DNA of 64,000 nt from the IMG/VR virus record IMGVR_UViG_3300032322_002561, positions 1 to 64,000 of that record; one strand, written 5' to 3'. The position numbers and the translations under genes are program-made. Under the pieces are notes generated by a model. The model searched no databases, was not told the DNA's origin, and was given only the letters and a program-made list of their open reading frames with translations. Positions 41,326 to 57,406 of the stretch are shown one piece after another (position 1 is the stretch's first letter; every line of letters starts with the position of its first letter).

Positions 41326-42224
41326 ACTGTATATTTTTAACATATGATGAACCAAATCGCGAGGAAAATTGGGTCAAAATTAAGAACATGGTACCATGGG
41401 CCCAGCGTGTGGATGGTGTTAAAGGGTCTGACGCCGCTCACAAAGCCGCCGGCGAAGCAAGTAGTACCGAGCGTTTTATTCTTATTGATGGCGACAACAT
41501 TCCAGATTCTGCGTTCTTCAATCTCACACTAGAATTCCCCACAGCAGAATACGAGCAGGCAGTGTTTCGTTGGCGTGCAAGAAATCATATCAACGGACTC
41601 ATGTACGGCAACGGTGGTTTGAGTTCGTGGACTCGTACCTTTGTCAAGAATATGCGCACACACGAAGCCACTGACGGGCGCAGTGAAACCGAAGTTGAAT
41701 TTTGTTTTGATCCCCTGTATTGGCCCATGTATAACTGTTATTCAACCACGTATCCCAATGGTTCGGCATTTCAGGCCTGGCGTGCAGGATTTCGTGAAGG
41801 TGTCAAGATGTGCCTGAACAAAGGTGCTCGTCCCACCGTGGACGAATTCCGTGAACGAGTACATCATAGAAATCTTGATCACCTGACCATATGGCACAAC
41901 GTAGGTGCTGATGTTGACTACGGATTATGGGCCATGGCTGGTGCCAGGCAGGGCACTTACATGACCATGTTGACCGGCTGGGATCATCGTGAGGTTCAAG
42001 ATTTTGATAAACTTGCTGAGTTATGGAAAACTGTGGCCAACACTGATCCACGCTTGCTGGCCAATCGCGTGGGGCCTGATCTTGGCGGCGAGTTAGATTT
42101 GCCAATGAGCATGCTAGATGTTGATCAAAGCAAGTTCTTCAAACATCACTATCGAAGTAATTGGCACAATATGTCGGTCATGACTAGAGAAATTGATGTA
42201 ATAAGACAGCAGGAAGGTTGGTAA
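41298..42224 (+). CDS. GT-A fold (GT2-like) glycosyltransferase
   Basis: CIFLTYDEPN...GVKGSDAAH...FILIDGDN (DxD)...INGLMYGNGG; GGAG SD before ATG 41298. Confidence 0.7.
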   Translation: MHRVDVADLDCIFLTYDEPNREENWVKIKNMVPWAQRVDGVKGSDAAHKAAGEASSTERFILIDGDNIPDSAFFNLTLEFPTAEYEQAVFRWRARNHINGLMYGNGGLSSWTRTFVKNMRTHEATDGRSETEVEFCFDPLYWPMYNCYSTTYPNGSAFQAWRAGFREGVKMCLNKGARPTVDEFRERVHHRNLDHLTIWHNVGADVDYGLWAMAGARQGTYMTMLTGWDHREVQDFDKLAELWKTVANTDPRLLANRVGPDLGGELDLPMSMLDVDQSKFFKHHYRSNWHNMSVMTREIDVIRQQEGW

Positions 42225-43179: not shown

Positions 43180-44208
43180 ATGTCCAAACAAGTATTGATC
43201 ACAGGCGGTGCTGGTTTCATTGCACATCACATGATTGAGCATATCATACAGACCACGACCTGGAACGTGATTTGCCTGGATCGTCTTGATTTCAGCGGAA
43301 ATTTAAATCGTCTGCACGAGATATTAGCAAAATTTTTGCCGCAAGATCAAAGTCGAGTCAAGATTGTGTATCATGATCTCAAAGCTGAAATTAATTCTAT
43401 GATTGCGGCCGATATCGGGCAGGTAGACTATGTGTTGCATCTTGCGGCCAGTAGTCATGTTGATCGTAGCATATCAAGACCCATGGATTTTGTCATGGAC
43501 AACGTGGTTGGTACTGTGAATTTGTTGCAGTGGGCCAGAACACAAAACAATTTAGAAAAATTCATGTATTTCAGCACGGATGAAATTTTTGGTCCTGCAC
43601 CTGCTGGTGTGGCCTACAAAGAACGAGATAGGTACAACTCTACAAATCCTTATTCAGCCAGCAAGGCTGCTGGCGAGGAAATGTGTGTGGCTTTTGAAAA
43701 CACCTATGGCCTACCCATAGTGATCACACATACCATGAATGTGTTTGGTGAGCGGCAACATCCAGAAAAATTTATTCCACTGTGTGTGCGCAAGGTCCTG
43801 GCTGGTGAAACCATCAAGATTCACAGCAACAAGGACCGCACACAAGCTGGTAGCAGACACTACATTCATGCCAAGGATGTGGCTGCAGGTGCCATGTTTA
43901 TTTTAAATGTCAGCCCTGACAATGTAGTTAAAGATTACGGCGGAGCTCGGTGTCCCAAATTTAATTTGGTAGGTGCTGAAGAAATTGATAATCTTGCTCT
44001 GGCTCAATTGGTGGCGCAGTCTGTGGGGAAACCTTTGCATTATGAACTTGTGGATTTTCACAGCAGTCGCCCAGGGCATGATCTTAGATATGCACTCAAC
44101 GGTGATTTCATGGCTTCCCTGGGCTGGAAGCCAACAATCAAACTGTCGGATCGCATTCAGCAAGTGGTAGCATGGACCCTGCAAAATCCGCAATGGATAC
44201 AATCATGA
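43180..44208 (+). CDS. rmlB: dTDP-glucose 4,6-dehydratase
   Basis: ITGGAGFI, HLAASSHVDRS, STDE, YSASK, HPEKFIP, RPGHDLRY; start reassigned to ATG 43180. Confidence 0.92.
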   Translation: MSKQVLITGGAGFIAHHMIEHIIQTTTWNVICLDRLDFSGNLNRLHEILAKFLPQDQSRVKIVYHDLKAEINSMIAADIGQVDYVLHLAASSHVDRSISRPMDFVMDNVVGTVNLLQWARTQNNLEKFMYFSTDEIFGPAPAGVAYKERDRYNSTNPYSASKAAGEEMCVAFENTYGLPIVITHTMNVFGERQHPEKFIPLCVRKVLAGETIKIHSNKDRTQAGSRHYIHAKDVAAGAMFILNVSPDNVVKDYGGARCPKFNLVGAEEIDNLALAQLVAQSVGKPLHYELVDFHSSRPGHDLRYALNGDFMASLGWKPTIKLSDRIQQVVAWTLQNPQWIQS

Positions 44209-45056
44209 CCAAGCCTGTGTTACCTTTTGTGGAAATCATGGCCACACAGGCCTGCAATATCAGTTGTACAGGTTGTACAAATTACAGTGATCTCAATCAC
44301 AAAGGATGGTTGTCCTGGGAACAAGCTCGAGCACAAATTACGCCATGGCTACAACGAGTCGACATTCCTGATTTTGGTATTCTTGGTGGAGAACCTTTGT
44401 TGAATCCTGAAATACGCGACTGGATCCGTGGCATAAGAGAACTCATGCCCAAGGCACAGATAAGATTTACCACAAATGGGTTATTGTTAGACAAGAATCT
44501 TGATATCGTTGATTTAGCAGCAGAAGTGGGAAACATTGTTTTTAAAATTGGAGTACACACAGACAGTTTAGCCATTGAACAAACAATTGATTATATTTTA
44601 AATAGATTTGATTGGCAACCAGTGACCGAGTTTGGTATCAATCGGTTACTCACTAAAAACAAATTTAGATTTCAAATAAATCGGCCAACTACTTTTTGGA
44701 AAAGTTTTCGAGGTGACTATACAAACATGCAACCTCACAACAGTAATCCAGCCGAGGCTTTTTCAATTTGTTGCCAGAAGACTTGTCCATTACTATATCA
44801 AGGAAAAATATACAAATGCAGCACCAGTGGTTTACTGTTAGATGTGTTAGAAAAATTTGGGCACCAAGACAACACCGAGTGGCTTCCGTTTATTAGCCAA
44901 GGATTACAGCCAGATTGCACAGATCAACAATTACAAGAATTTTTGAATAATTTTGGACGTCCACACAAGATCTGTGGCCAATGTCCAACACAAAAAGATC
45001 TGGGCAGTAAAATAGTGCATCTACAAAACGTGCATACCAAAAAAATCAAATCATGA
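44205..45056 (+). CDS. Radical SAM protein with C-terminal Cys cluster
   Basis: CNISCTGC, LGGEPLL, TTNG, C..TC.LLYQGKIYKC...ICGQC. Confidence 0.88.
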   Translation: MTKPVLPFVEIMATQACNISCTGCTNYSDLNHKGWLSWEQARAQITPWLQRVDIPDFGILGGEPLLNPEIRDWIRGIRELMPKAQIRFTTNGLLLDKNLDIVDLAAEVGNIVFKIGVHTDSLAIEQTIDYILNRFDWQPVTEFGINRLLTKNKFRFQINRPTTFWKSFRGDYTNMQPHNSNPAEAFSICCQKTCPLLYQGKIYKCSTSGLLLDVLEKFGHQDNTEWLPFISQGLQPDCTDQQLQEFLNNFGRPHKICGQCPTQKDLGSKIVHLQNVHTKKIKS

Positions 45057-46102
45057 ACACGTGCTTGCCAATATCTGTACAAACACAAGATCGAAAAATT
45101 TATCGTAAAGATAGATTAGTTGCGGCCTTTTTTCAAGCACGAGAACAGAATAAAAATTTAGAAATAGATTTTTACCCTGAGGGTAGTTGTGCCACGTCAT
45201 TGCGATTGTATGAAATTTTGGATGAACTTTGTGAAAAATACAATTTTGATAAATCACGAATCACAATCAAAACTGCCAATCTTTTAGAACAACATGATCA
45301 CTACCGTATAGTTTGTGTTCCTAGTTACTGGTATGAGATTCGGGAAATCCAGGCCTGGGTGACCAAGAATTCCATAGATACTGGAATTATGCCCACGCGG
45401 CATTTTGGTTGCTTTGTGAGTAGAAGTACCTGGTCCAGACTATGGGTTTCCACGTATCTTAACAAACATCACGCAGATAAAACTTTGCAAACTTATCACT
45501 ATGATCGTACCAGACAAAACTACAATGGCAACGGCTATGTGGGTCTTGATGATCTTTTTCAGTTTGGTTGCAATATCATACCTGACTGTGCAAATTTTTT
45601 GACCACGTGTCCTAGAACCATTGATCTTGATTTTTTAAAAACGTATAAAAATGCAAAATCGTTATTTCAGCACGGCGACAGTTACTATCCAATTCAAGTA
45701 CCTGCCAACATGAATTTGCTGAACTACTATCATGACATATTTGTAGACATTGTTACAGAACCAAATGTCATGGGCACAAACTTTTTAGTCACTGAAAAAC
45801 TTTGGAGATGCATTGTGGCCAGGAGACCTTTTATTGTGCTTGGTACTGCAAACTATTTGCATAATTTGAGAAAGTTGGGATTTGACACTTTTTATCAGTA
45901 CTGGGACGAGAGTTATGATGGACAAATTGGACAAACCAGAATTGGTCATATGCTAGAAGTTATTGACAGGTTGGCGACTTGGGATACTGAACAATGCAGT
46001 CAGACACTCAACCGCATGCAACCCATACTTGATCATAATTTACAAGTTTTTAAATCGCTTGATTACAACAAACTTGCCAAGGTATTTGACATCAATGACT
46101 GA
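45053..46102 (+). CDS. GT10-like glycosyltransferase-family protein
   Basis: VDIVTEP...VTEKLWRCI...RPFIVLG...LRKLGFDTF...DESYD. Confidence 0.6.
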   Translation: MNTCLPISVQTQDRKIYRKDRLVAAFFQAREQNKNLEIDFYPEGSCATSLRLYEILDELCEKYNFDKSRITIKTANLLEQHDHYRIVCVPSYWYEIREIQAWVTKNSIDTGIMPTRHFGCFVSRSTWSRLWVSTYLNKHHADKTLQTYHYDRTRQNYNGNGYVGLDDLFQFGCNIIPDCANFLTTCPRTIDLDFLKTYKNAKSLFQHGDSYYPIQVPANMNLLNYYHDIFVDIVTEPNVMGTNFLVTEKLWRCIVARRPFIVLGTANYLHNLRKLGFDTFYQYWDESYDGQIGQTRIGHMLEVIDRLATWDTEQCSQTLNRMQPILDHNLQVFKSLDYNKLAKVFDIND

Positions 46103-47489
46103 TAAATCAGATTTTTACTCAGCCGCCGAACACATGCGTGATGTGCTAGGCAAAGGCATGTGCCTGGCCAAGTGGAAACAGGTAAGCCTGCACTTGCCTA
46201 CCGGACTCAATAATTCATGTTATCACCCACCTTTGCATGAAATACCAGCTGATTTGTTGACTTCCAATCCCAGTGCCTTGCACAACACTCCTTACAAAAA
46301 ACAGCAAAGACAGATCATGCTACGTCAAGAACGTCCGCAAGAATGCAGTTATTGTTGGGCCATGGAAGACAACGGCAAACTCAGTGACAGACATTATAGA
46401 AGTGGTGAGCCTTGGGCTGCCAAAGATTTTGATACGATCATAAATTCCACAGGAGATGAAGATGTTTTACCTAGTTATGTTGAAGTCAATTTTAATCATG
46501 CTTGTAATCTTAAATGTAGTTACTGTAGTCCACAATTCAGTTCAACCTGGCAGCAAGAAGTGGATCAGCTTGGCGCTTATCCTACTAGCACTCAACACAA
46601 TGATCCTGATTATTTTAGGGGTCGCCGTAAGCCTATTCCTGTTCGCGAACATAATCCATACGTAGAAGCCTTTTGGCAGTGGTGGCCTACTTTGTATCCA
46701 GAGTTAGAACATTTTAGAATGACTGGTGGTGAGCCGCTCATGGACCGGAATACCTATCGTGTGTTTGATTATGTGCTAGAGAATCCTAGCAAAAAATTGC
46801 ATCTAAATGTGACCAGTAATTTCACTGTGGAAGAAAATTTGTGGAAAAAATACAAAGACTATGTGCGAAGGCTGTGTGACACTGATGATGTCAAACTGGA
46901 ACACTTCATGCAGTATGTCAGTCTTGATGCCTGGGGCGCACAGGCCGAATACATCAGACACGGTCTAGATTTTGAATTGTTGTGGGATCGAGTCAATCAA
47001 TACCTGGAAGAAATACCTTATAGAAACAGTTTGACATTTATAGTGACCATGAACAATTTGAGTGTAACCACACTGGCAAATTTGTTTGCTGGCATCCTTG
47101 GGTTAAGACAAACCTACAGCAAAACCTATCAACGTGTATGGTTTGACACACCAGTATTGCGTCAACCAGAGTGGCAAAGTCTACAGATTCTACCTGAAAG
47201 TTATGCTGAAAAATTAGAACACTTGTGGGCCTGGATGATTCGACAAACAGAACGTCCTGAAGATCCATTTCACGGTTTCAAGGATTATGAAATTGCCCGG
47301 CTGGATCGAGACATAGCCTGGATGCGTAGTGGTCAGAACCTGGACCCTGCAGTATTACAGTCCAGAAAAGCTGACTTTTACAGATTTTTCAACGAACATG
47401 ATCGCAGGCGCGGCACTGACTTTTTGAAGACTTTTCCTGACATGGCCTCTTGGTGGAAGGAGTGCGAATATCATGCTAGGCAATCATAA
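46095..47489 (+). CDS. Radical SAM protein with N-terminal twitch/SPASM-like domain (subtype A)
   Basis: CLAKW...SCYHP...CSYCW; CNLKCSYC; TGGEP; start reassigned to ATG 46095. Confidence 0.9.
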   Translation: MTDKSDFYSAAEHMRDVLGKGMCLAKWKQVSLHLPTGLNNSCYHPPLHEIPADLLTSNPSALHNTPYKKQQRQIMLRQERPQECSYCWAMEDNGKLSDRHYRSGEPWAAKDFDTIINSTGDEDVLPSYVEVNFNHACNLKCSYCSPQFSSTWQQEVDQLGAYPTSTQHNDPDYFRGRRKPIPVREHNPYVEAFWQWWPTLYPELEHFRMTGGEPLMDRNTYRVFDYVLENPSKKLHLNVTSNFTVEENLWKKYKDYVRRLCDTDDVKLEHFMQYVSLDAWGAQAEYIRHGLDFELLWDRVNQYLEEIPYRNSLTFIVTMNNLSVTTLANLFAGILGLRQTYSKTYQRVWFDTPVLRQPEWQSLQILPESYAEKLEHLWAWMIRQTERPEDPFHGFKDYEIARLDRDIAWMRSGQNLDPAVLQSRKADFYRFFNEHDRRRGTDFLKTFPDMASWWKECEYHARQS

Positions 47490-48585
47490 AGTGGTTGTTG
47501 ACGAGTGGGCTGAAGTCTGGGACCTACTACGGCCTTATGCAGATGCAAGTTTTTGGCGTTGGGAAGACGTACCGCTTGATCCAGATACCATATATGTTGT
47601 GGGACGAGTGGTACTCAAACAAAATTGGATCAGTATTACTGAGTGGGCAAAGCGTCATCCTGGTAAGATAATTTTTAGTAATCCAGCCGAAGGTAGTCAA
47701 ACCATACTGTTACAGTTACAACGCATGCGCATTGTTGATTTGGTAAAAAATGGTTCGATAGGTTTGTTGACTTCAGGAGATCTTGAACCAGGCTGGAAAT
47801 ATTGTCAAACCGACTGTTACTTTTCCAATATTGTAGAATATTTAGAAAACATAGATGCCCACACATATTCAAGTCAGGTTAGAGAAAAAATTCAAAAACC
47901 TTATAATTTTTTGATGCTGAATGGTCGACTACGGCCACATCGTAAGGCCTTGATCGACGCACTGCGTGAAAAAAATTTATTGGATCGGGCCCTATGGACC
48001 AATCTTGGCAGCAGAGTTGAAATGGAGTTTACCAGTCAACTGCAAACCAACAAATTAGAATCCATAAGATTGTTGCCGCCCGAATACGAAATTGAGCGTG
48101 CAAGGCCCAATCTAACTGCCAGCATGTACACTGACGGTGGATTTGTCAAACACCAATTATTCAATAATACCTGGGGCGATGCCATTGTAAATCCACAGGC
48201 CTATATTGACACCTATTTTAGTCTAGTTACGGAAACCATATTTGATTATCCTTACACTTTTAGAACAGAAAAAATTTGGAAACCCATGATCATGCAACAC
48301 CCCTTTGTGGTGGCGGCCAACACAGGTTATTATCGAGATTTGCGAAAAGCTGGGTTCCGTACTTTTGATCATTTAATTGATGAAAGTTTTGATCAAATTG
48401 ACAACAGTGCCGACAGAATTTCGCGTATAATACAAGTTGTTGATGCAATAATTTCTAATGGTGCAGATGAATTCTTAAAAGCCAGTGAAGATGTATGTAA
48501 ATATAACTATCTGCACCTGCGCGAACACAATCAACGTGAGCGTGATCAATTGCCTATGAAATTAACCCAGTATATCAATGAATGA
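47473..48585 (+). CDS. GT10-like glycosyltransferase-family protein
   Basis: LNGRLRPHR; FSLVTET...RTEKIWKPM...HPFVV...LRKAGFRTF...IDESFD. Confidence 0.6.
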   Translation: MLGNHKVVVDEWAEVWDLLRPYADASFWRWEDVPLDPDTIYVVGRVVLKQNWISITEWAKRHPGKIIFSNPAEGSQTILLQLQRMRIVDLVKNGSIGLLTSGDLEPGWKYCQTDCYFSNIVEYLENIDAHTYSSQVREKIQKPYNFLMLNGRLRPHRKALIDALREKNLLDRALWTNLGSRVEMEFTSQLQTNKLESIRLLPPEYEIERARPNLTASMYTDGGFVKHQLFNNTWGDAIVNPQAYIDTYFSLVTETIFDYPYTFRTEKIWKPMIMQHPFVVAANTGYYRDLRKAGFRTFDHLIDESFDQIDNSADRISRIIQVVDAIISNGADEFLKASEDVCKYNYLHLREHNQRERDQLPMKLTQYINE

Positions 48586-49918
48586 TTTAGAATTTCGTCG
48601 TCAAGTATTGGACACTAAAAGTGCCAGCTTTTGTGCGGCCAAATGGTACAATGCCACCATATGGTTGGGCTCAGGTCAGACCACTAGTTGCCATCATCCA
48701 CCAGCACACACTATTGGAGAAGAGTTTCGAATCAACCCGCGGGCAATTCATAACACTGCTCAAAAAAAAGAAGATCGTCGCATGATGTTGGCTGGTGAAA
48801 GACCACCTGGATGCGAGTACTGCTGGAAGATCGAAGACATGGGCGTGGATGCTGTGAGTGATCGTGTGTACAAAAGCAAAATTTATCCTATCGAGGCCCT
48901 GGATCAAGCATTTGGCACACCGGTCGAAGCCGACGTGAATCTTCGCACGCTGGAAATTGCTTTCGATCGCACTTGTCAATTTGCCTGCTCGTACTGTAAT
49001 CCAGCGTTCAGTAGCACCTGGGTCAAGGACATCAAGAACAACGGAGCCTATGAAAATTTAATCAGCGACGGGCGCAATCATTTTACACACGAACACGACA
49101 GTGCTCAACTCTATCGCTTTGGCGAAACCAATCCCTATGTTGAAGCCTTTTTTGCCTGGTGGGAAACAGACCTGCATCGTACTTTGCAAGAATTAAGAAT
49201 CACTGGCGGTGAACCAACCATGAGTGGCGAGCTATGGAAGTTGATTGATTGGTTCAAAGACAATCAAGGCAAGAGCCAAACACGCTTGGCCATCAACTCA
49301 AATCTGGGCATGGATCGTCTCCGGTTGTTGGACTTTATCAAACGTGTGGAAGGTATTCCGCACCTGGAAATTTACACCAGCATGGAAGCCACTGATGCTC
49401 AAGCCGAATACATCAGAGATGGTCTGGATTACGATCTATGGATGCACAATGTACAAGAATTGTTGGAACACGATGACATACGTGCTGTGCATTGTATGTG
49501 TACTATCAACGCCCTGTGCCTGGACAGCCTACCAGATCTGCTGGATCAATTGATGCGACTCAAACAGGTTTATACCCGTGAGCGTGTGAACTTTACATTG
49601 AACATATTGAGATTCCCCAGCTTCCAGAGTGCCCTGGTCCTGCCAGATGCCATACGTACACAGTACAGACACAATCTTGAAACCTGGTTGAAACTCAATC
49701 AAGCCAATCCCTTGTTGCACGAGCATGAAATCAATCACATGCAGAGATTGATCGACTATCTTGATGTGGTCAAGACCCCGCACAGTGACACATTTGAAAT
49801 GCCAAAACTGCACAACGATTTTAAAAAATTCTATCAACAATATGATCAACGACGCAACAAAAACTTTGTTGATACTTTTCCTAACCTAGCCGATTGGTTC
49901 AATGACATACCAGTATAA
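48578..49918 (+). CDS. Radical SAM protein with N-terminal twitch/SPASM-like domain (subtype A)
   Basis: CAAKW...SCHHP...CEYCW; CQFACSYC; TGGEP. Confidence 0.9.
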   Translation: MNDLEFRRQVLDTKSASFCAAKWYNATIWLGSGQTTSCHHPPAHTIGEEFRINPRAIHNTAQKKEDRRMMLAGERPPGCEYCWKIEDMGVDAVSDRVYKSKIYPIEALDQAFGTPVEADVNLRTLEIAFDRTCQFACSYCNPAFSSTWVKDIKNNGAYENLISDGRNHFTHEHDSAQLYRFGETNPYVEAFFAWWETDLHRTLQELRITGGEPTMSGELWKLIDWFKDNQGKSQTRLAINSNLGMDRLRLLDFIKRVEGIPHLEIYTSMEATDAQAEYIRDGLDYDLWMHNVQELLEHDDIRAVHCMCTINALCLDSLPDLLDQLMRLKQVYTRERVNFTLNILRFPSFQSALVLPDAIRTQYRHNLETWLKLNQANPLLHEHEINHMQRLIDYLDVVKTPHSDTFEMPKLHNDFKKFYQQYDQRRNKNFVDTFPNLADWFNDIPV

Positions 49919-51161
49919 CAGTGCAGACCTAGTCAAGCCGGTAGAGCTGACTGAACGTGAAGAATTTTTACTAAAAGATAGTAAAACATTCTGCATCTAT
50001 CCTTGGATACACTTGCATGCCTATCCCACAGGTGAAGCCTATCCTTGTTGCCATGCTGAAATGAAACCCGGGGTTGTAGGAAACTGTCGCGAAAAAACCC
50101 TGGCAGAGATATGGGTTGACGAACCCATGCAACGACTACGCAAAGACATGCTGACAGAAACACCCAACCCGGCATGCACAAGATGTTATGAACAAGAACA
50201 AGCCGGATTCTTCAGTGGCAGAAAAAGTGCCAACAAGCATCACGGACACCATATCAAGAAGTTGGAATCAAATCCATTTGAGATGACCTACTGGGACATA
50301 CGATTCAGTAACTTGTGCAATCTCAGTTGTCGTAGTTGCGGGCATATTTTCAGTAGTAGTTGGTACCAAGATCAAGCTGTGCTGGCTGGCCCTGAATGGA
50401 AGAGCAACAATAAGCCTTTGAACTATGCTGGACGTACCGAAACCGACATCTGGGAACAATTGATTCCGCATCTTGATCATGTGGAACAGATTTACTTTGC
50501 CGGTGGCGAACCGCTCATGATGGAAGAGCATTACAACATTCTTGAGGAACTAGAACGCCGTGGCAGGTTTGATGTGCGTTTGATTTACAACACCAACTTC
50601 ACACACGTCAAGCTCAAAGATCGCTGGGTGTTTGATTATTGGAAAAAGTTTAAATCAGTGGCAGTGGGTGCCAGCTTGGATGCCATGGGTCTGCGTGCCG
50701 AATACATTAGGAAAGGCACAGTATGGAAGACGGTTGAAAACAATCGACGCCAGATGCTGTTGGAATGTCCACATGTGGACTTTTATATCAGCCCCACCCT
50801 CAGTATATTAAATGCCTGGCACCTGCCCGATTTCCATCGTGACTGGAGCGAAAAAGGTCTGATCAGACCACAGGATCTCAACGTGAACATACTGCAAGAC
50901 CCGGCCTACTATCGCATAGATATCGCACCTACGGAATACAAACAGAAGTTGCGTAAAAAGTTTGAAGAACATCTGGCATGGTTACAATCACAAGACATGT
51001 TGAATCGTGCCAGCGTGGGATTTGAAAGTGCCATAAACTTCTTGATGAACACTGACAACACTGCACTGATACCCAAGTTTTGGGACAAGACCAATCAACT
51101 TGATAGCATACGCAATGAAAATCTATTGCGAGTCATTCCTGAACTTGAGGCTCTTAAATGA
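49902..51161 (+). CDS. Radical SAM protein with N-terminal twitch/SPASM-like domain (subtype B)
   Basis: CIYPW...PCC...CTRC; CNLSCRSC; AGGEP; YNTN. Confidence 0.9.
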   Translation: MTYQYNSADLVKPVELTEREEFLLKDSKTFCIYPWIHLHAYPTGEAYPCCHAEMKPGVVGNCREKTLAEIWVDEPMQRLRKDMLTETPNPACTRCYEQEQAGFFSGRKSANKHHGHHIKKLESNPFEMTYWDIRFSNLCNLSCRSCGHIFSSSWYQDQAVLAGPEWKSNNKPLNYAGRTETDIWEQLIPHLDHVEQIYFAGGEPLMMEEHYNILEELERRGRFDVRLIYNTNFTHVKLKDRWVFDYWKKFKSVAVGASLDAMGLRAEYIRKGTVWKTVENNRRQMLLECPHVDFYISPTLSILNAWHLPDFHRDWSEKGLIRPQDLNVNILQDPAYYRIDIAPTEYKQKLRKKFEEHLAWLQSQDMLNRASVGFESAINFLMNTDNTALIPKFWDKTNQLDSIRNENLLRVIPELEALK

Positions 51162-52378
51162 ACTTGCCACACGATCAATTTTGTGTATTACCTTGGATCA
51201 GCTTAGAAGCCAGTCCCATTGGCACTGTGAGACCTTGTTGTTTAGCTGACGACGAAATTGTAGATGAACAAGGCGAAAAATTCAATTTGTCTTCAGCCAA
51301 CTTTGGAAGCATACAATCTAGTCGTCACATGACACAGCTCAGACAAGATTTCTTGTCGGGTAAAAAACCACAAACTTGTAGAAAGTGTTGGAACGAAGAA
51401 CGTGCTGGTCGTACCAGCAAACGCATGCACACTCTTGACAGACTCAAACATATTTTGCCCGATCAGGAGTGGACGCAGGATGCCAAACCCTTGATGTTCT
51501 TGGATCTCAAATTGGGCAATATCTGTAATTTGAAATGTAGAATTTGTGGCTCCTGGAGCTCCAGTCAATTTGCCACAGAAGAATTGGCTGACATGCCTTT
51601 GGAAACCGACAAAAAAACTACCTTTCCCTATCAAATGTTGCGTGCGGGATCATGGCCCAGAGACAACAAACAATTTTGGCAACAAATTGACCAGCACCTA
51701 CACGATATTAGGTACATTGAATTCACTGGTGGTGAACCATTCATGATTCAAGAACACTTTGACATGTTGCAAGGCATAGTAGATCGCGGCATTGCGCATC
51801 AAGTGGAAATACACTACAACACCAATGGCACTCAATGGCCCGAACAGGCCGAACAAATATGGCAACATTTTCGCACAGTGGAAATTGCATTCAGCATCGA
51901 TGACATTGGTGAAAGATTTGAATATCAACGTAGCAACGCTGTCTGGACTGAAGTATGTGCGAATCTTGAAAAATTCAACAAGTTAAAACAGCGACATTCA
52001 AATATTGTGCTACAAATTTGTACCACAGTGAATGTTTTCAACATACGGTATCTTGATCAAGTGGCTGCTTGGATTGACTCTCATAAAGAAAATTTTAACT
52101 TTGTGTACTGGAATATCATGCATGATGCCTGGTATTTCAGTATTTCTACCTTGCCAGACACAGTGAAAAAATCCTTGACAGAATACTTGACGTCTGTTGC
52201 GATACCAGAACAGTACAAATCAGAAATTCAAGGCATAATTGAATTTATGAATCGTGGTGCTTCCACAGATGGATTCATGTTAAAATTAAAAATAAAAGAT
52301 CTAGATCGCAAGCGCGGTCAAAATCTTGCTCTAGTAGAGCCAGAGTTTGCTCAATTGATTGACTATGCCGGCCCCTAA
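51158..52378 (+). CDS. Radical SAM protein with N-terminal twitch/SPASM-like domain (subtype B)
   Basis: CVLPW...PCC...CRKC; CNLKCRIC; TGGEP; YNTN. Confidence 0.9.
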   Translation: MNLPHDQFCVLPWISLEASPIGTVRPCCLADDEIVDEQGEKFNLSSANFGSIQSSRHMTQLRQDFLSGKKPQTCRKCWNEERAGRTSKRMHTLDRLKHILPDQEWTQDAKPLMFLDLKLGNICNLKCRICGSWSSSQFATEELADMPLETDKKTTFPYQMLRAGSWPRDNKQFWQQIDQHLHDIRYIEFTGGEPFMIQEHFDMLQGIVDRGIAHQVEIHYNTNGTQWPEQAEQIWQHFRTVEIAFSIDDIGERFEYQRSNAVWTEVCANLEKFNKLKQRHSNIVLQICTTVNVFNIRYLDQVAAWIDSHKENFNFVYWNIMHDAWYFSISTLPDTVKKSLTEYLTSVAIPEQYKSEIQGIIEFMNRGASTDGFMLKLKIKDLDRKRGQNLALVEPEFAQLIDYAGP

Positions 52379-53672
52379 GCAAAGACCTGAAACCCTGTGC
52401 ATGGCTCCGTGGACGCATACCTATCTTAGTCCACAGACCGAACGGCGCATGTGTTGTGCCAGCCGAGAACCTGCGCAAAACTTTGAGCAGTACATAGACA
52501 CGTCCTCAGGCACAGGCGAATATAGTCCCGTGGCTCTTGATGAACACTGGAATAGTGAACACATGAGAAGTGTGCGACTGCGTATGATGCGTGGGGAAAC
52601 CCTGCCCGAATGTGAAGTATGCAACAACAAGTTATTGAACACTGATGTATATCGAGACTATTTCAATAGACTGTTCGAGCACAAGTATGAGGAATGCATG
52701 CGTGCTACGGATCGCTATGGATTTACCAAGGTGCGCCCTGTGAGCTGGGATTATAGATTCAGTAACCTATGTAATTTTAAATGCAGAATGTGTGGAGACA
52801 TGTTGAGCTCTAGCTGGGAAACTGAACAGCGTCAACATGACATGATTGACTGGTCAGATAAAAAAAATACCTGGATGCGTCCTGAGGTTCGTGAACGTAT
52901 TTCACTCTATCAAGACACGCAAATTGAACATGAATTTGCACTGGCTGTGGAACAACATCGAGTAGAAGAAGTGTATTGGGTCGGTGGTGAGCCACTCATG
53001 TATGAACAGCACTGGCGTTATATGCGTCGTATCATCGAACTAGGCGATGGTCCTCGAGTGTATGCCAGATACAACACAAATCTCAGCAGGATAGACTACA
53101 AAGGAACAAATCTTTACACAGACATTTTGGCACACATACGTGATTGGCAGATATGTGCCAGTCTGGATGGGACTGGAGCCACCGGTGAATACATTAGAAC
53201 AGGCTTAAACTCTGAATCCTGGTTGGCAAATTTTGTGCAAGGTCGTCGGCTGGCCTCTCATCGCAGGCAAATGCGTATAGACTTTACTTTGACTTTGCCA
53301 GGACTTTTCCAAGTCGAGAACATAAACAGTCTTGCACAAAGTCTAGATGTAGATGTTCTAGCCAAGGTTGTTTTCAGTTTTACACCAGACATTATCATGA
53401 GTCCTTTGGCCTTGCCTAGACAGTTATTAGACGATACAGTAGACCGTTTGGCGGATCGTATACCAGCCGGTGCCTTGAAGGATGTGTTGTTACAGCTCAA
53501 ACAGCGACCTACATTTGCGGAACAATGGCCCACTGAGTGGCAGGCTGGACTTGCAAAAGGCAAGCGTCGTGTGTTAAAATTAGAACAAATACGTGGTGAT
53601 ACCTATACCATGGCAGATATACTCAGACCCAATCAGGAAATATATGACTGGTACCAAGCAATCGCTACTTGA
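52365..53672 (+). CDS. Radical SAM protein with N-terminal twitch/SPASM-like domain (subtype B)
   Basis: CMAPW...MCC...CEVC; CNFKCRMC; VGGEP; YNTN. Confidence 0.9.
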   Translation: MPAPKQRPETLCMAPWTHTYLSPQTERRMCCASREPAQNFEQYIDTSSGTGEYSPVALDEHWNSEHMRSVRLRMMRGETLPECEVCNNKLLNTDVYRDYFNRLFEHKYEECMRATDRYGFTKVRPVSWDYRFSNLCNFKCRMCGDMLSSSWETEQRQHDMIDWSDKKNTWMRPEVRERISLYQDTQIEHEFALAVEQHRVEEVYWVGGEPLMYEQHWRYMRRIIELGDGPRVYARYNTNLSRIDYKGTNLYTDILAHIRDWQICASLDGTGATGEYIRTGLNSESWLANFVQGRRLASHRRQMRIDFTLTLPGLFQVENINSLAQSLDVDVLAKVVFSFTPDIIMSPLALPRQLLDDTVDRLADRIPAGALKDVLLQLKQRPTFAEQWPTEWQAGLAKGKRRVLKLEQIRGDTYTMADILRPNQEIYDWYQAIAT

Positions 53673-54699
53673 TGTTGTAGAAATAGATCTAGGTACCGCA
53701 GAAGATCGTTTGCGTGTGTATGCCAACATCTATGACAACAGTCTCAGTCGCAAATGGCTAGCGGCCTTGAATGATTTGCTGATCAATCAATACCACCTGG
53801 AAAAGAACTACTGTTTTTTTGGATTTGCCGATGGTCCCAGGAACGGACCTTATCTGTTAGAACAAATCAATAACAGTATACAAGCTATTAACAAGTCCGG
53901 TATAGGCTATCACATTGACGATTATTTTGATATGGCCAACAGTGTGGATGAGTCAGACGATGTTGATCACAATCATTTCAATCAACTACACAGATACTTT
54001 GAAGACTTGCAAGGCGGCAGTGGCCACATCAGTGATTACTACTGGCAAGCTGACAACGCCACACGTTGGCATATTAGACAACTGAACTTGTTGTGCCATG
54101 AATTTGAAAGTTGGCAACTGAGCTGGCGGAAAAAACACACGGCACCGATGTGGCAACGACCCAGCCAACTCATGTGCTGGCTGAGTGCGCCACGTTTTGT
54201 TTTAGATGAAGCGGATTACGAACTGTTTGGCATAGAAACAATAAATCGTAGCCTGGGCGGAGTATATGTAGGCGTCAACAAAGCAGTTGGCAAACATCAC
54301 TGGGAAGTGTTTCAGGATGAAGGCCGCGACAGCAGGATAGGCGAGCTGACTACTACCAGCCTTAAAGCTCAAACTGAAGCCGCTGGAGACTTTGACATAG
54401 AGTGGGCCAACAATCCAGGCACATTTCCTTGGCAGATAAAACAACTAAAAGAGTTTCGCGAATGGCTAACGGTCAATGGCTTTGATCCCGAAGATCGTAG
54501 CTTGACCATTGGACATCCGCAGGTGGGACAAGTGGATTTAATCCGCAGTTTTGGCTCGGAAGATTATCAAGAGATTTGGGCGCAGTTAAATACTCATTTA
54601 AATGTGCATGCTATTCGCACCAGCACTGCACGTGCCACTTATGAATATTTGTGGTCTGACCCAGACTACATGCAACAACAACTGAGGAACATGAAATGA
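53644..54699 (+). CDS. Hypothetical protein (His/Glu-rich, LHRYFE and LCHEFE motifs)
   Basis: About 351-aa ORF coupled on both sides; start uncertain. Confidence 0.7.
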   Translation: MTGTKQSLLDVVEIDLGTAEDRLRVYANIYDNSLSRKWLAALNDLLINQYHLEKNYCFFGFADGPRNGPYLLEQINNSIQAINKSGIGYHIDDYFDMANSVDESDDVDHNHFNQLHRYFEDLQGGSGHISDYYWQADNATRWHIRQLNLLCHEFESWQLSWRKKHTAPMWQRPSQLMCWLSAPRFVLDEADYELFGIETINRSLGGVYVGVNKAVGKHHWEVFQDEGRDSRIGELTTTSLKAQTEAAGDFDIEWANNPGTFPWQIKQLKEFREWLTVNGFDPEDRSLTIGHPQVGQVDLIRSFGSEDYQEIWAQLNTHLNVHAIRTSTARATYEYLWSDPDYMQQQLRNMK

Positions 54700-54797
54700 A
54701 ATGGATTCGTAATCTCATCGAACGTATACGTCTTGAAATACGCTATAGAAAAAAACTAAAAGAACTACGCAAACGCGATCCGTTCATTTATAAATGA
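54696..54797 (+). CDS. Small basic 33-aa protein ending DPFIYK (not in ORF track)
   Basis: MKWIRNLIERIRLEIRYRKKLKELRKRDPFIYK*; ATGA overlaps at both ends. Confidence 0.65.
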   Translation: MKWIRNLIERIRLEIRYRKKLKELRKRDPFIYK

Positions 54798-54952
54798 TCA
54801 CTCCTTGTGTAAACATCTGTATCATGACCAATGGCGTGTGCGAAGGGTGTGGTCGCACCATTGATGAAATTGCAGAGTGGACCTTGTATACCGATCAAGA
54901 GCGGCTGACAATCATGCAAAGACTAGGACATGAGCAACATACTGGGAATTAG
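54794..54952 (+). CDS. DUF1289-like small Fe-S protein (not in ORF track)
   Basis: MITPCVNICIMTNGVCEGCGRTIDEIAEW...ER: the PC...C...C.GC.RT.DEI..W pattern. Confidence 0.85.
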   Translation: MITPCVNICIMTNGVCEGCGRTIDEIAEWTLYTDQERLTIMQRLGHEQHTGN

Positions 54953-56384
54953 TGCTGGATTTCATGATGCTGCTGTTACAGTAATTGATCGCCATGGCGA
55001 CATACTGTTTGCTGCACACAGTGAGCGTTTTAGCAAGAAAAAAAATGATGCCAATCTGCATCCTAATCTCATGATGGACGCTATGCATTACGGTGATATC
55101 AATCACATTGCGTACTATGAACGTCCCTGGCTAAAACAATTACGTAGACTACGAAGTGGCGAAGGCATACAGTGGGATCAACTCACTGTCAAACAAATAT
55201 TAACAAAACAACTGGGGTCAGCTGTGTGGCCTCAAATAAGCACTCACAATCATCACCTGTGCCATGCGGCTGCAGGTTTTCAAACCAGCCCATATGATCG
55301 TGCCACATGTGTGGTCATAGATGCCATTGGCGAATTTGACACAGTTTCAATCTGGGGAGCAGAATATGATAGTAAAAATCAAGCAAAGTATAAGAAACTT
55401 TGGAGCCAGAGTTACCCGAGGAGCATCGGGCTCTTTTATAGTGCAATTACTCAGCGAGTTGGCCTACACCCGCTAGATGAGGAATACATCACCATGGGCA
55501 TGTCCGCTTGGGGTCAGCCACGATATGTAGCGGAATGTCGCGCCCTGTTGGCGGATAACCTGCACATAGGCATAGACCCCAACTGGTTGCCTGACGCAGT
55601 CAATGAAGACATAGCTGCATCAGCACAGATTTTAACAGAAGAATTGATATATACGATTATACGTCGTGCTAAGGATTTTGATTGGAGCACCAATCTGGTG
55701 TACCAAGGCGGCGTGGCTTTGAACTGTCTTGCTAATAGAAAACTCGGTGAATATTTTGAAAACATTTGGATCATGCCTGCTCCTGGCGATAGTGGCAATA
55801 GTCTTGGCGCTGCCGCATTGGCCCACGGAAAACGTTTACGCTGGAGGCATGCGTTTCTTGGCCACGAAATCCCAGGAGAATATCCTGTTGGCGCCGTCGT
55901 TGATCATCTACTATCAAATCAGATCGCTGGAGTTGCTAGTGGACGAGCCGAGTTTGGACCTCGAGCCCTGGGAAACCGAAGCCTCCTCGCCGACCCCCGA
56001 GGAATACATATAAAGGATCAAGTCAATGCGATCAAACGCCGCCAAAAGTTTAGACCATTTGCGCCAGTTATCCTCTCAGAGCATGTGGATGAATTTTTTG
56101 ATATGCCCCGGGGTTGGAGTAGCAGTCCTTATATGCAGTCAATCGCAACTTGTCGCCGTCCTGACTTATTTCCTGCTATCTGTCATGTGGACAACACTAG
56201 CCGAGTACAGACTGTTGCGGCTGACGGCTCAGGCATTAGACGTCTCTTAGAGGCCTGGTATGCACGCACAGGCTGTCCCATGTTGCTGAACACCAGCTTG
56301 AACATACGCGGTGAACCCATGGTCAATGATCGTCGAGATGCAGATAGATTCGAACAACTATACGGTGTGAAAGTTTTTAGTTAA
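54930..56384 (+). CDS. O-carbamoyltransferase (NodU/CmcH/TobZ family)
   Basis: GFHDAA, ERFS, HHLCHAA, DAIGE, GGVALNC, EFGPRALGNRS, FRPFAP, RVQTV, LLNTSLN. Confidence 0.95.
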   Translation: MSNILGISAGFHDAAVTVIDRHGDILFAAHSERFSKKKNDANLHPNLMMDAMHYGDINHIAYYERPWLKQLRRLRSGEGIQWDQLTVKQILTKQLGSAVWPQISTHNHHLCHAAAGFQTSPYDRATCVVIDAIGEFDTVSIWGAEYDSKNQAKYKKLWSQSYPRSIGLFYSAITQRVGLHPLDEEYITMGMSAWGQPRYVAECRALLADNLHIGIDPNWLPDAVNEDIAASAQILTEELIYTIIRRAKDFDWSTNLVYQGGVALNCLANRKLGEYFENIWIMPAPGDSGNSLGAAALAHGKRLRWRHAFLGHEIPGEYPVGAVVDHLLSNQIAGVASGRAEFGPRALGNRSLLADPRGIHIKDQVNAIKRRQKFRPFAPVILSEHVDEFFDMPRGWSSSPYMQSIATCRRPDLFPAICHVDNTSRVQTVAADGSGIRRLLEAWYARTGCPMLLNTSLNIRGEPMVNDRRDADRFEQLYGVKVFS

Positions 56385-57406
56385 AGATAAGTTTCAAGAC
56401 CGCCACGTCTGCGTAAATCCTGAGTGCAACAACTTATGCCACCATCCCAAAAATAACTGTGACGCAGTTCTGAAATAATAGGGTTGATTCGGTGACGTTT
56501 GCAGTAATCAAATACTTCGCGATTGTAGGCACTGAATATCACATTTTCTTCATCTAGCACAAGACAGTTGACATCAAACACCGTTTCAGCCACAAAGCCA
56601 GTCCACTTGTTCAAATAGGTGTCTACAAATTGAGTGAACTCAGGTGTGGGAGTTTGTCCTTGCACATACCAGGCCCCAGGATTTGATTCGTATTTGAACT
56701 TGCCTACCTCCATGGCGGCCCAAATTGAACTATCCCAGATTTTACATATATCCCAGCCAGGAAAATCTCTGGCAAGATCAAGATTAACATCGTGCTTGCT
56801 GCTCAACAACACGCCTGGCTTGAGAATAGCAAACACGGCATCGCCGTGACCATCTGTGACAGCTTCGTGTATTCTATACTCTGGCCCCAGCACATTGTCC
56901 ACAATCCAGCGTGTTTGTTCTGGCTTCAAGAAATCACTGTTGTCAAAAAACACATCACGGCCCACACGCACAATACACGAAGCCGACGCACCATTCAAGA
57001 TACAATCTGGATCCCAAGCACTGCGATGTGGGTTAACCACCGATTCTGAAAACTTGGTGCAGACCTTGTCCAGTTCTGGCACTGCCAACACACGCAACAA
57101 ACGATCACCTAGAGTAATTTGCCAATCTCTGGGAGTCAAGGGCGGTAGTGGAGCTCCCCCGCCTTCGGTTTGAAACCACACAAATTCATCTTTGTTAGGC
57201 AGTTCAGGTCTGTGAACCAGGGCACCATACTGTTCAATTGTACGTTGCAGATTGTCAAGATCTTCCTGGGTTTCAGCCAGGATCTGTTGTAGTTGACAGC
57301 GTACCTGAGCATTGTCAATGAAATCAAAGTAATCGGGCGTGTAAGCACGACCCACAATGACTTCTTCAAGTGGTTGCCACGAGGTGTATGAATTAACTTT
57401 GGCCAT
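56381..57406 (-). CDS. Amidinotransferase-family (pentein) protein
   Basis: VNSYTSWQPLEEVIVGR, PRD, RVGRD, GHGDA, C-terminal GGISCCTQD. Confidence 0.85.
   Translation of the reverse strand: MAKVNSYTSWQPLEEVIVGRAYTPDYFDFIDNAQVRCQLQQILAETQEDLDNLQRTIEQYGALVHRPELPNKDEFVWFQTEGGGAPLPPLTPRDWQITLGDRLLRVLAVPELDKVCTKFSESVVNPHRSAWDPDCILNGASASCIVRVGRDVFFDNSDFLKPEQTRWIVDNVLGPEYRIHEAVTDGHGDAVFAILKPGVLLSSKHDVNLDLARDFPGWDICKIWDSSIWAAMEVGKFKYESNPGAWYVQGQTPTPEFTQFVDTYLNKWTGFVAETVFDVNCLVLDEENVIFSAYNREVFDYCKRHRINPIISELRHSYFWDGGISCCTQDLRRRGGLETYL

What the first reader, a model, noticed from the sequence alone, without database searches (positions are those of the whole stretch)
46095..53672. Array of five radical SAM paralogues with the SPASM/twitch domain at the N-terminus
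Each has an N-terminal C-x3-W...(C/S)C...CxxC...(S)xR module before the CxxxCxxC core, the reverse of the usual C-terminal SPASM/twitch order. All cores continue with SS(T/S)W/F after the motif. Two subtypes are visible: A (46095, 48578; C.AKW...SC.HP, CSYC) and B (49902, 51158, 52365; C..PW...CC, C(R)xC). Keeping five intact divergent paralogues in a compact genome implies distinct substrates or sequential steps, such as position-specific sugar oxidation or epimerisation, or a hetero-oligomer.
Basis: partly seen in the sequence, partly recalled or inferred. Interest (0 to 1): 0.75.

Follow-up and report, generated by a model that had tools for sequence, protein, structure and literature searches.

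The report
Five twitch radical-SAM genes in jumbo phage
A giant freshwater phage carries a conserved operon of five different radical-SAM enzymes of a catalogued but unstudied family whose extra iron-sulfur module sits at the front of the protein, most likely for stepwise tailoring of a sugar-type product, and its relatives carry up to 16 copies.

Summary
Five + strand ORFs (46095-47489, 48578-49918, 49902-51161, 51158-52378, 52365-53672) each have four invariant N-terminal Cys before the CxxxCxxC core. A non-rSAM gene (47473-48585) interrupts the array.

The architecture is not new. All five score 280-393 bits against NCBIfam NF033640, "twitch domain-containing radical SAM protein" (cut-off 170). 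I found no characterised member and no solved structure.

What is new is the setting:
- The host genome is a T4-related, RaK2-like jumbo phage (236 kb held; relatives 343-353 kb), not a compact genome.
- The order A1-x-A2-B1-B2-B3 holds in nearly all 80 related viral loci that reach that far.
- Orthologues are 58-85% identical, all seven Cys are invariant, and dN/dS is 0.06-0.10.
- Near-complete relatives carry 6-16 family members.
- Natural fusions join neighbours in the same order, and one lineage fuses an A-type copy to a GT2 glycosyltransferase.

Neighbours are an NDP-sugar dehydratase/epimerase, a carbamoyltransferase, an amidinotransferase and glycosyltransferase-like paralogues. The best reading is five non-redundant, sequential radical tailoring steps on a sugar or glycan-type substrate. 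The substrate is unproven, and peptide or protein modification remains a live rival. The hetero-oligomer test gave no answer.

The parts
46095..47489 (+). A1: N_Twi_rSAM paralogue, subtype A (N-terminal Cys 23/42/84/87; core Cys 137/141/144)
   Evidence: NF033640 321.9 bits against cut-off 170. All seven Cys invariant in 60 distinct orthologues. dN/dS 0.063.
47473..48585 (+). GTc: 370-aa protein between A1 and A2, one of five in-window paralogues sharing a TEK...PF...G(F/Y)xTF...DExYD motif; possibly glycosyltransferase-like
   Evidence: No Pfam or NCBIfam hit. Its Atlas family is viral only; the nearest named family is GT10 at a weak 0.80. Paralogue alignment A5. No PDB sequence match. Kept between A1 and A2 in nearly all related loci.
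48578..49918 (+). A2: N_Twi_rSAM paralogue, subtype A
   Evidence: NF033640 305 bits. Seven Cys invariant in 61 orthologues. dN/dS 0.104. A2-like relatives are fused to a GT2 domain.
49902..51161 (+). B1: N_Twi_rSAM paralogue, subtype B (CC motif)
   Evidence: NF033640 392.7 bits; Pfam SPASM at residues 31-96. AF2 model pLDDT 95. dN/dS 0.073.
51158..52378 (+). B2: N_Twi_rSAM paralogue, subtype B
   Evidence: NF033640 333.9 bits; SPASM at 9-78. dN/dS 0.091. B1-like+B2-like single-chain fusions exist.
52365..53672 (+). B3: N_Twi_rSAM paralogue, subtype B
   Evidence: NF033640 279.7 bits; SPASM at 12-87. dN/dS 0.100.
53644..54699 (+). g53593: conserved orphan protein translationally coupled to B3
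   Evidence: Follows B3 in nearly all related loci that reach that far. AF2 pLDDT 84. No Foldseek PDB match; only uncharacterised AFDB clusters at TM 0.72-0.75. Weak cyclophilin-like barrel, Z 7-8.
54696..54797 (+). Conserved 33-aa basic peptide ending ...RKRDPFIYK, just upstream of the carbamoyltransferase
   Evidence: Found in 71 of 80 related loci, always with an ATG start and 33 aa in all but one (35 aa). The tail motif is widespread in viral contigs and tracks the carbamoyltransferase, not the rSAMs. Synonymous codons vary at every position.
54930..56384 (+). NodU/CmcH-type carbamoyltransferase
   Evidence: Pfam Carbam_trans_C 1.6e-47 and Carbam_trans_N 3.4e-36. Conserved downstream in related loci.
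56381..57406 (-). Amidinotransferase-family protein
   Evidence: phmmer against PDB: AGAT 8.8e-14, StrB1 1.7e-10, SxtG, HsvA. Atlas clusters are named amidinotransferase.
43180..44208 (+). NDP-sugar 4,6-dehydratase/epimerase (SDR); variable among relatives
   Evidence: Pfam GDP_Man_Dehyd 8.7e-50 and Epimerase 9.5e-50. No close orthologue in the related loci, only weak 22-25% SDR matches in some.
44172..45056 (+). Sixth radical SAM in the operon, with ordinary N-terminal CxxxCxxC; not a family member
   Evidence: Pfam Radical_SAM 9.5e-13; NF033640 only 34 bits. Present in only a few relatives.
41286..42224 (+). g41286: conserved first gene of the block; contains an ILIDGDNIP (DxD-like) string; function unknown
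   Evidence: 71-79% identical in most related loci. No family hit. Read directly from the sequence.

Best explanation
The five genes are non-redundant members of NCBIfam NF033640 (N-terminal-twitch radical SAM). Each most likely binds the SAM-cleaving [4Fe-4S] cluster on CxxxCxxC. Each most likely also binds one fully Cys-ligated auxiliary [4Fe-4S] cluster on the N-terminal C-x18-C-x41-C-x2-C quartet, which is the BtrN twitch pattern moved to the front of the chain. They are co-translated from one tightly coupled operon in the tail-fibre-adjacent accessory island of a roughly 350-kb T4-related, RaK2-like freshwater jumbo phage. I infer that they carry out distinct, successive radical tailoring steps on a nucleotide-sugar or growing glycan. 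Each step would be C-H abstraction by 5'-deoxyadenosyl radical, followed either by electron loss to the auxiliary cluster (oxidation) or by H-atom return (epimerisation). The product would be further carbamoylated, amidinated and transferred by the neighbouring enzymes. Shown here: family membership, Cys conservation, synteny, purifying selection, fusions and context. Inferred: cluster binding, reaction type, substrate and the destination of the product.
For: Membership: 280-393 bits against a cut-off of 170. Twitch homology: Pfam SPASM at the N-termini and a profile match to the BtrN twitch, E 2.7e-5. The Cys quartet plus core triad are invariant across six paralogues, 69 family members (the first of the four is nearly invariant there, 90% or more) and 57-63 distinct orthologues of each gene. 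The AF2 model is confident, pLDDT 95. Non-redundancy: paralogues are 18-34% identical and each is closer to outside representatives than to its neighbours. The order is kept in nearly all 80 viral loci and down to about 41-64% identity in marine relatives. dN/dS is 0.06-0.10. Coupling: stop/start overlaps of -4 to -37 nt at most junctions, at most 9 nt apart at the others. Single-chain fusions occur in genomic order: A1-like+A2-like (seen at full length on four or more contigs), B1-like+B2-like and B2-like+B3-like. Sugar context: SDR NDP-sugar dehydratase and carbamoyltransferase and an amidinotransferase. A2-like rSAM-GT2 fusions exist, and one locus interleaves 9 rSAM genes with 4-5 GT2 genes. 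Other arrays sit beside NTP_transferase, DegT aminotransferase and PMM, or GT2, PIG-L and an ABC ATPase. The carbohydrate rSAMs BlsE and DesII are among the top structural matches, Z 12.8-12.9.
Against: No member of the family has a known substrate in anything I could find. The structural matches are equally good to the peptide maturases SkfB, SuiB and CteB, and to anSME, which modifies a protein residue. Some family members are fused to TPR, Sel1 or a subtilase fragment, which points to protein or peptide substrates. The in-window GT-like paralogues have no confirmed glycosyltransferase assignment. The SDR gene has no close orthologue in the related loci. Dispersed extra copies in relatives sit singly among replication and packaging genes with no sugar genes beside them. 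Fe-S binding is inferred from sequence only. The B1+B2 complex prediction gave no answer.
Confidence: 0.45

Rival explanations
1. The five enzymes are peptide or protein maturases, RiPP-like or acting on virion proteins such as the neighbouring 5065-aa fibre, rather than sugar enzymes.
For: Most characterised SPASM/twitch rSAMs modify peptides, and the top structural matches include SkfB, SuiB and CteB as well as anSME, which modifies a protein residue. Family members are fused to TPR, Sel1 and a subtilase fragment. A strictly conserved 33-aa peptide gene lies in the same operon. The island directly follows the baseplate and giant-fibre genes.
Against: The peptide tracks the carbamoyltransferase. 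Of 49 viral loci with at least 3 kb upstream of it, 33 have no N_Twi rSAM there. Pfam, NCBIfam and PHROGs scans reported no peptide-recognition domain in the five rSAMs or g53593. Direct rSAM-GT2 fusion and nucleotide-sugar neighbours point the other way.
Confidence: 0.25
2. The paralogues form one obligate hetero-oligomeric machine rather than acting as separate enzymes.
For: There is translational coupling along the whole array. Natural single-chain fusions of neighbours occur in genomic order. Gene order is nearly fixed across the 80 close loci, with B2 and B3 swapped in some marine relatives.
Against: The B1+B2 prediction scored 0.00, which is no evidence either way. Relatives carry many solitary copies that must work alone. 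B2 and B3 swap order in marine relatives. This is compatible with, not exclusive of, the best explanation.
Confidence: 0.2
3. The enzymes hypermodify phage DNA or its nucleotide precursors, as several T4-type phages do with sugars and amino groups.
For: The phage is T4-related. Extra family copies in relatives sit beside gp46/47, UvsX-like, helicase and terminase genes. The cores have weak similarity to the nucleotide-binding rSAMs viperin and MoaA. One B1-B2 fusion lies near ThyA and DHFR.
Against: No thymidylate-synthase/hydroxymethylase family gene occurs in the 236 kb held, which is 68% complete, so this is weak. The core array sits in the tail-fibre accessory island, not the nucleotide-metabolism region. 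Gaps between T4 core genes are general insertion sites for accessory genes (established knowledge).
Confidence: 0.08
4. The copies are redundant or decaying duplicates with relaxed selection.
For: Tandem paralogy by itself.
Against: dN/dS is 0.06-0.10, as low as or lower than the neighbouring enzymes. All cluster Cys are invariant in 57-63 orthologues each. Orthology is one-to-one across the clade. No stops were found in any window copy.
Confidence: 0.02

Closest known systems
NCBIfam NF033640, N_Twi_rSAM (twitch domain-containing radical SAM protein)
   Same: All five window proteins, plus a sixth elsewhere in the genome, match end to end above the curated cut-off. They share the domain order N-terminal four-Cys module, CxxxCxxC barrel, helical C-terminal region.
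   Different: The family has no assigned function. The phage setting is not part of the family description as far as I could find: a conserved five-gene operon and 6-16 copies per genome.
BtrN (butirosin 2-deoxy-scyllo-inosamine dehydrogenase), the founding twitch-domain rSAM
   Same: The auxiliary-cluster module is homologous at sequence level (E 2.7e-5). The four-Cys spacing is alike: here C-x18-C-x41-C-x2-C, and in BtrN Cys169/187/232/235 by my recollection of the published structure. BtrN acts on an amino-cyclitol or sugar-type substrate.
   Different: In BtrN the twitch follows the barrel; here it precedes it. Overall identity is negligible. No dehydrogenase activity is shown here.
anSME, BlsE and DesII (SPASM/twitch or related rSAMs with solved structures)
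   Same: These are among the best structural matches to the barrel of the B1 model: Foldseek E about 1e-5, VIA Z 12.7-12.9. BlsE and DesII act on nucleotide-linked sugars.
   Different: The matches cover only residues about 128-385, with TM about 0.4 by query. No solved structure has the N-terminal module. Peptide maturases match equally well.
Radical SAM cassettes in the tail-fibre hypervariable region of pelagimyophages (PMC7029224)
   Same: T4-like aquatic myophages with glycosyltransferases and radical SAM cassettes next to tail-fibre genes.
   Different: That paper does not identify the family, the N-terminal twitch, the conserved five-gene order or the copy-number expansion.

Membership tests
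NCBIfam NF033640 N_Twi_rSAM | Whole-protein HMM score above the curated cut-off (170 bits) with end-to-end coverage | tested here: met
   Scores 321.9, 305.0, 392.7, 333.9 and 279.7 bits; profile positions 1/2 to 386-397 of 398.
NCBIfam NF033640 N_Twi_rSAM | Twitch/SPASM-type Cys module N-terminal to the CxxxCxxC barrel | tested here: met
   Pfam SPASM at residues 9-96 in B1-B3, ahead of Radical_SAM. Four invariant N-terminal Cys in all six paralogues. Match to the BtrN twitch. A1 and A2 lack a Pfam SPASM hit but keep the quartet.
Radical SAM superfamily | CxxxCxxC motif, GGE-type SAM-binding motif, partial TIM barrel | tested here: met
   Invariant C137/C141/C144 and GGEP. The AF2 model matches rSAM barrels at Z 10-13.
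Radical SAM superfamily | Binds [4Fe-4S] and reductively cleaves SAM | not testable with these tools
   Needs anaerobic biochemistry.
Twitch-domain rSAM (one auxiliary cluster) as opposed to full SPASM (two clusters) | Three or four conserved auxiliary Cys rather than seven or eight | tested here: met
   Only four N-terminal Cys are invariant across the six in-genome copies; across 69 family members three are invariant and the first is nearly so. A fifth, the first C of CC, is confined to subtype B.
rSAM sugar dehydrogenase or epimerase (BtrN, NeoN, HygY type) | Demonstrated action on a sugar or cyclitol C-H; for epimerases a Cys H-atom donor | not testable with these tools
   Context only. 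Each paralogue has at least one further invariant Cys outside the cluster motifs (A1 C261 and C457, A2 C314, B1 C289, B2 C288, B3 C264). These sit at non-equivalent positions and their role is unknown.
RiPP maturase (rSAM-SPASM with precursor peptide) | Dedicated precursor peptide that co-occurs with the maturase, and a peptide-recognition (RRE) domain | tested here: not met
   The only conserved small ORF tracks the carbamoyltransferase and mostly occurs without N_Twi rSAMs. Pfam, NCBIfam and PHROGs scans reported no such domain.

The most novel reading that the evidence does not exclude
A widespread clade of roughly 350-kb freshwater jumbo phages has turned one uncharacterised radical-SAM family into its own multi-step radical chemistry toolkit. 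It has a fixed five-enzyme assembly line plus up to eleven extra copies. With a carbamoyltransferase and an amidinotransferase, it would build a heavily tailored glycan or small molecule of a kind not yet described for any virus. The family's N-terminal auxiliary cluster would represent a circularly permuted twitch architecture with its own chemistry.
Probability: 0.3. Interest if true: 0.8.

Novelty: new member of a known kind. Interest (0 to 1): 0.55.

Why it matters
The family is very large: at least 6,763 50%-identity clusters at E<=1e-30. It is catalogued but has no known reaction and no structure. A phage clade that keeps five orthologous copies in fixed order under strong constraint, and expands to 16 per genome, gives a compact defined gene set for finding the family's chemistry. 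Cultured phages carrying small versions make it testable: Vibrio phages K566/K567 have four family-like genes, and Ralstonia phage RsoM2USA has one (a tblastn match only) plus the carbamoyltransferase and the peptide. It would also show what accessory radical chemistry jumbo phages bring into oxic freshwater hosts, and what the glycosyltransferase and radical-SAM islands beside tail-fibre genes actually make.

Tried and rejected
- Nucleotide search of the array against cultured phages found nothing.
- Literature searches for an N-terminal twitch or SPASM found nothing specific. RadicalSAM.org only remarks that some SPASM/twitch-cluster members have conserved Cys N-terminal to the barrel.
- The moraphage paper does not look like this lineage: genomes up to 307 kbp and no radical SAM mention.
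- Complex prediction for B1+B2 with four clusters gave no answer.
- RNA evidence is weak. No RNA run holds this DNA. Metatranscriptome contigs hold only short 80-90% fragments of relatives, and DNA carry-over is not excluded.
- I first suspected the conserved 33-aa ORF was the rSAM substrate. I rejected it as a specific partner because it follows the carbamoyltransferase.
- I also considered that its IYK-stop tail encodes the T4 late promoter TATAAATA. I rejected this because Tyr is mostly TAC, the stop is mostly TGA, and synonymous codons vary at every position.
- The DUF1289 small Cys protein looked like a possible redox partner, but it is in only 2 of 80 loci.
- g53593 got no convincing fold match.
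- The GT-like paralogues got no PDB sequence match.
- tblastn of the peptide against cultured phages found nothing, possibly because of low-complexity masking.
- I could not read model coordinates, so distances between Cys and clusters in the AF2 model were not measured.
Full report
**What is there**

The interval 46095-53672 holds six + strand genes. Five are radical SAM proteins: A1 46095-47489, A2 48578-49918, B1 49902-51161, B2 51158-52378 and B3 52365-53672. One unrelated 370-aa gene, GTc 47473-48585, lies between A1 and A2.

In an alignment of the five plus a sixth genomic copy, the invariant residues include four N-terminal Cys (C23, C42, C84, C87 in A1 numbering) and the CxxxCxxC triad C137/C141/C144. 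Also invariant are the SS pair after the triad, GGEP and an ExxR motif. Pairwise identity is only 18-34%.

**The architecture is already catalogued**

- All five match NCBIfam NF033640, "N_Twi_rSAM, twitch domain-containing radical SAM protein", from end to end. Scores are 280-393 bits against a curated cut-off of 170.
- Pfam places SPASM (PF13186) at residues 31-96, 9-78 and 12-87 of B1-B3, ahead of the Radical_SAM domain.
- A 69-sequence family profile aligns its positions 9-81 with the C-terminal twitch domain of BtrN, E 2.7e-5.
- Three of the four N-terminal Cys stay invariant and the first stays nearly invariant (90% or more) across those 69 members. This fits one fully ligated auxiliary cluster (twitch) rather than the two clusters of full SPASM.
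- A profile of the six paralogues finds 6,763 50%-identity clusters at E<=1e-30.
- The RadicalSAM.org paper notes that some SPASM/twitch-cluster members have conserved Cys N-terminal to the barrel and that no structures exist (PMC9477430).
- My literature searches found no characterised member.
- The AF2 model of B1 is confident (pLDDT 95, pTM 0.92). Solved structures match only its barrel: anSME, CteB, BlsE, SkfB, SuiB, DesII, viperin and MoaA, with TM about 0.4 and Z up to 13.
- AlphaFold DB holds the whole fold in cellular proteins at TM 0.80-0.89, one of them named as twitch-containing.

**The genome**

The window is the first 64 kb of a 236,309-bp IMG/VR record that CheckV rates 68% complete. 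It encodes gp46/47-like nuclease subunits, a gp55-like late sigma factor, and baseplate hub and wedge proteins. The wedge protein is closest, at 30-37%, to phages Phosso, SCTP-2, Atu_ph07 and RaK2.

So this is a T4-related, RaK2-like jumbo phage, not a compact genome. The rSAM operon lies in an accessory island directly after the baseplate genes and a 5065-aa ORF.

**Conservation**

- B1 has thousands of relatives at about 80% identity in metagenomes, some on contigs of 319-344 kb. IMG/VR holds 216 relatives.
- In nearly all 80 fetched loci that reach that far, the order is g41286 - (variable) - A1 - GTc - A2 - B1 - B2 - B3 - g53593 - carbamoyltransferase. Orthologues are one-to-one at 58-85% identity. 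A few loci have extra family copies, or lack GTc.
- Marine relatives at about 41-64% identity keep the array, sometimes with B2 and B3 swapped.
- Nei-Gojobori dN/dS, on pairs with dS 0.05-1, is 0.063, 0.104, 0.073, 0.091 and 0.100 for A1, A2, B1, B2 and B3. That is as low as or lower than the neighbouring enzymes.
- All seven cluster Cys are invariant in 57-63 distinct orthologues of each gene.
- In a FastTree of 183 domains, A1 and A2 fall in one clade of 42 rows and B1-B3 fall outside it. Each paralogue is nearer to outside representatives than to its genomic neighbours.

The paralogues are therefore old, distinct and individually maintained.

**Coupling**

Every junction from g41286 to g53593 is tight: most genes overlap by 4 to 37 nt and none is more than 9 nt apart.

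Among the best 150 family representatives, about 30 are single chains with two complete modules, each with its own CxxxCxxC. By tree placement several reproduce the genomic order:
- P0122 is A1-like + A2-like. It is seen at full length on at least four independent contigs.
- P0121 and P0126 are B1-like + B2-like. Their DNA translates without a stop.
- P0125 is B2-like + B3-like.

This favours close functional, perhaps physical, coupling. A direct B1+B2 complex prediction scored 0.00, which the tool itself says is no evidence either way.

**Expansion**

- The held genome has six family members and 12-13 radical SAM genes in all.
- Five relatives of 316-353 kb, rated 91-100% complete (two with terminal repeats), have 9, 6, 16, 10 and 12 family members above the cut-off.
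- In the 16-copy genome, the ten dispersed copies examined sit singly or, in two places, two genes apart. Those with identifiable neighbours lie among core genes: between gp47- and gp46-like genes, and next to the large terminase, a RecA/UvsX-like gene, a DnaB-like helicase and another helicase.
- Multi-copy arrays also occur in bacteria. Examples are six copies in 17 kb in an Elusimicrobia MAG and eight in a Bacteriovoracaceae MAG, and about ten consecutive rSAM genes after a sugar nucleotidyltransferase in another MAG.

**Evidence on the substrate**

Window neighbours:
- an SDR NDP-sugar 4,6-dehydratase/epimerase and a NodU/CmcH-type carbamoyltransferase;
- an amidinotransferase-family protein, matching AGAT at 8.8e-14 and StrB1 at 1.7e-10;
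- five paralogues of a viral-only family sharing a TEK...PF...GFxTF...DExYD motif, whose nearest named family is GT10, only weakly.

Elsewhere in the family:
- A2-like members are fused to a GT2 glycosyltransferase domain.
- That fusion lies in a 16-kb locus where nine rSAM genes are interleaved with four or five GT2 genes.
- A B1-B2 fusion sits beside a DegT-type sugar aminotransferase and phosphomannomutase.
- Bacterial homologues sit with GT2, PIG-L deacetylase and ABC-transporter ATPases.
- A pelagimyophage study had already noted glycosyltransferases and radical SAM cassettes in the tail-fibre hypervariable region (PMC7029224).

Against a sugar substrate:
- other family members are fused to TPR, Sel1 or a subtilase fragment;
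- structural matches to peptide maturases are as good as those to sugar enzymes.

**The peptide lead**

A 33-aa ORF (54696-54797) overlaps the g53593 stop. It reads MKWIRNLIERIRLEIRYRKKLKELRKRDPFIYK.

- It is present in 71 of 80 related loci. It always starts with ATG, is 33 aa in all but one locus (35 aa), and has a nearly invariant tail.
- A pattern search for the tail found at least 120 viral stretches.
- Of 49 with at least 3 kb upstream, only 16 have a family rSAM there, whereas most of these loci (about 50 of 59 listed) carry the carbamoyltransferase.
- Synonymous codons vary at every position, so selection acts on the protein and not on a T4 late-promoter sequence.
- An unannotated copy lies near the carbamoyltransferase of the cultured Ralstonia phage RsoM2USA.

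The peptide is thus a partner of the carbamoyltransferase, not a dedicated rSAM precursor. This lowers the RiPP reading but does not exclude it.

**Other points**

- g53593 is a conserved orphan with no convincing fold match.
- No flavodoxin, 2Fe-2S ferredoxin or thymidylate-synthase-family gene is in the 236 kb held. The enzymes presumably depend on host reductants, and there is no support here for hydroxymethyl-pyrimidine DNA chemistry.
- Metatranscriptome contigs hold only short 80-90% fragments of relatives, which is not proof of expression.
- The cultured Vibrio phages K566/K567 carry four family-like genes, two above and two below the cut-off, next to a gene with a weak GT8-like (LPS galactosyltransferase) match. 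This gives an experimental entry point.

**Verdict**

The architecture is a known, curated but uncharacterised family, so the reversed-order novelty claim falls. The claim of five maintained, non-redundant paralogues stands and is strengthened.

The most likely role is sequential radical tailoring of a sugar-type substrate in a phage accessory glycan island (about 0.45). Peptide or protein modification is the main rival (about 0.25). Hetero-oligomer formation is an open, compatible possibility.

Noticed in passing
window 54696-54797 (+); also L173-L252, L091, L094, L153, L299: A 33-aa, very basic peptide gene ending ...RKRDPFIYK. Related 33-72-aa versions occur in at least 120 viral contig stretches, in most cases on a contig that also carries a carbamoyltransferase gene. 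It is under protein-level selection. It is present but unannotated in the cultured Ralstonia phage RsoM2USA. Its function is unknown.
   Followed up: partly
relatives G001-G005 (records holding L024, L037, L072, L055, L027); L293-L298: Relatives of 316-353 kb (91-100% complete) carry 6-16 N_Twi_rSAM genes. Dispersed copies are inserted singly between core genes such as gp47|gp46, and next to terminase, UvsX-like and DnaB-like genes. This is the kind of site where T4-type phages keep mobile or accessory genes.
   Followed up: partly
window 372-1472 (-), 1981-3498 (-); genome 69.7, 104.2, 110.7 kb: Further radical SAM genes of other families, bringing the total to 12-13 in the 236 kb held. That is an unusually heavy radical SAM load for a phage.
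   Followed up: no
window 20304-35501 (+): A single 5065-aa ORF directly after the baseplate wedge gene, presumably a giant fibre or virion protein. It was not analysed.
   Followed up: no
window 59666-62662 (+): A 998-aa protein with about seven tandem repeats of a W.P.P..P.YIYVFGNQ motif. Homologues co-occur with the carbamoyltransferase and peptide in other viral contigs. No family assignment.
   Followed up: no
window 54794-54952 (+): A 52-aa DUF1289 four-Cys protein (Pfam 64 bits) overlapping the start of the carbamoyltransferase gene. It is present in only 2 of 80 related loci, so it is not a core partner of the rSAMs.
   Followed up: yes
window 42234-43178, 45053-46102, 47473-48585 (+); 57393-58589, 58570-59667 (-): Five paralogues (19-23% identical) of a viral-only family with an invariant TEK motif. 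They are possibly GT10-like glycosyltransferases. Atlas relatives include fusions to methyltransferase or SDR epimerase domains.
   Followed up: partly
L089, L090 (NZ_JBBAKG01 contigs 3 and 1): Two contigs of 148 and 183 kb binned in a Haliscomenobacter MAG carry the same operon at 75-76% identity. They are probably phage contigs binned with a bacterium, which is a weak hint of a Saprospiraceae host. Marine MAG contigs L091-L094 look likewise.
   Followed up: no
L104 (Saprospiraceae MAG contig_20): Two N_Twi_rSAM genes sit amid five PhyH-type dioxygenases, a WelO5-like oxygenase, a methyltransferase and an ABC ATPase. This is an oxidative tailoring cluster of unknown product.
   Followed up: no
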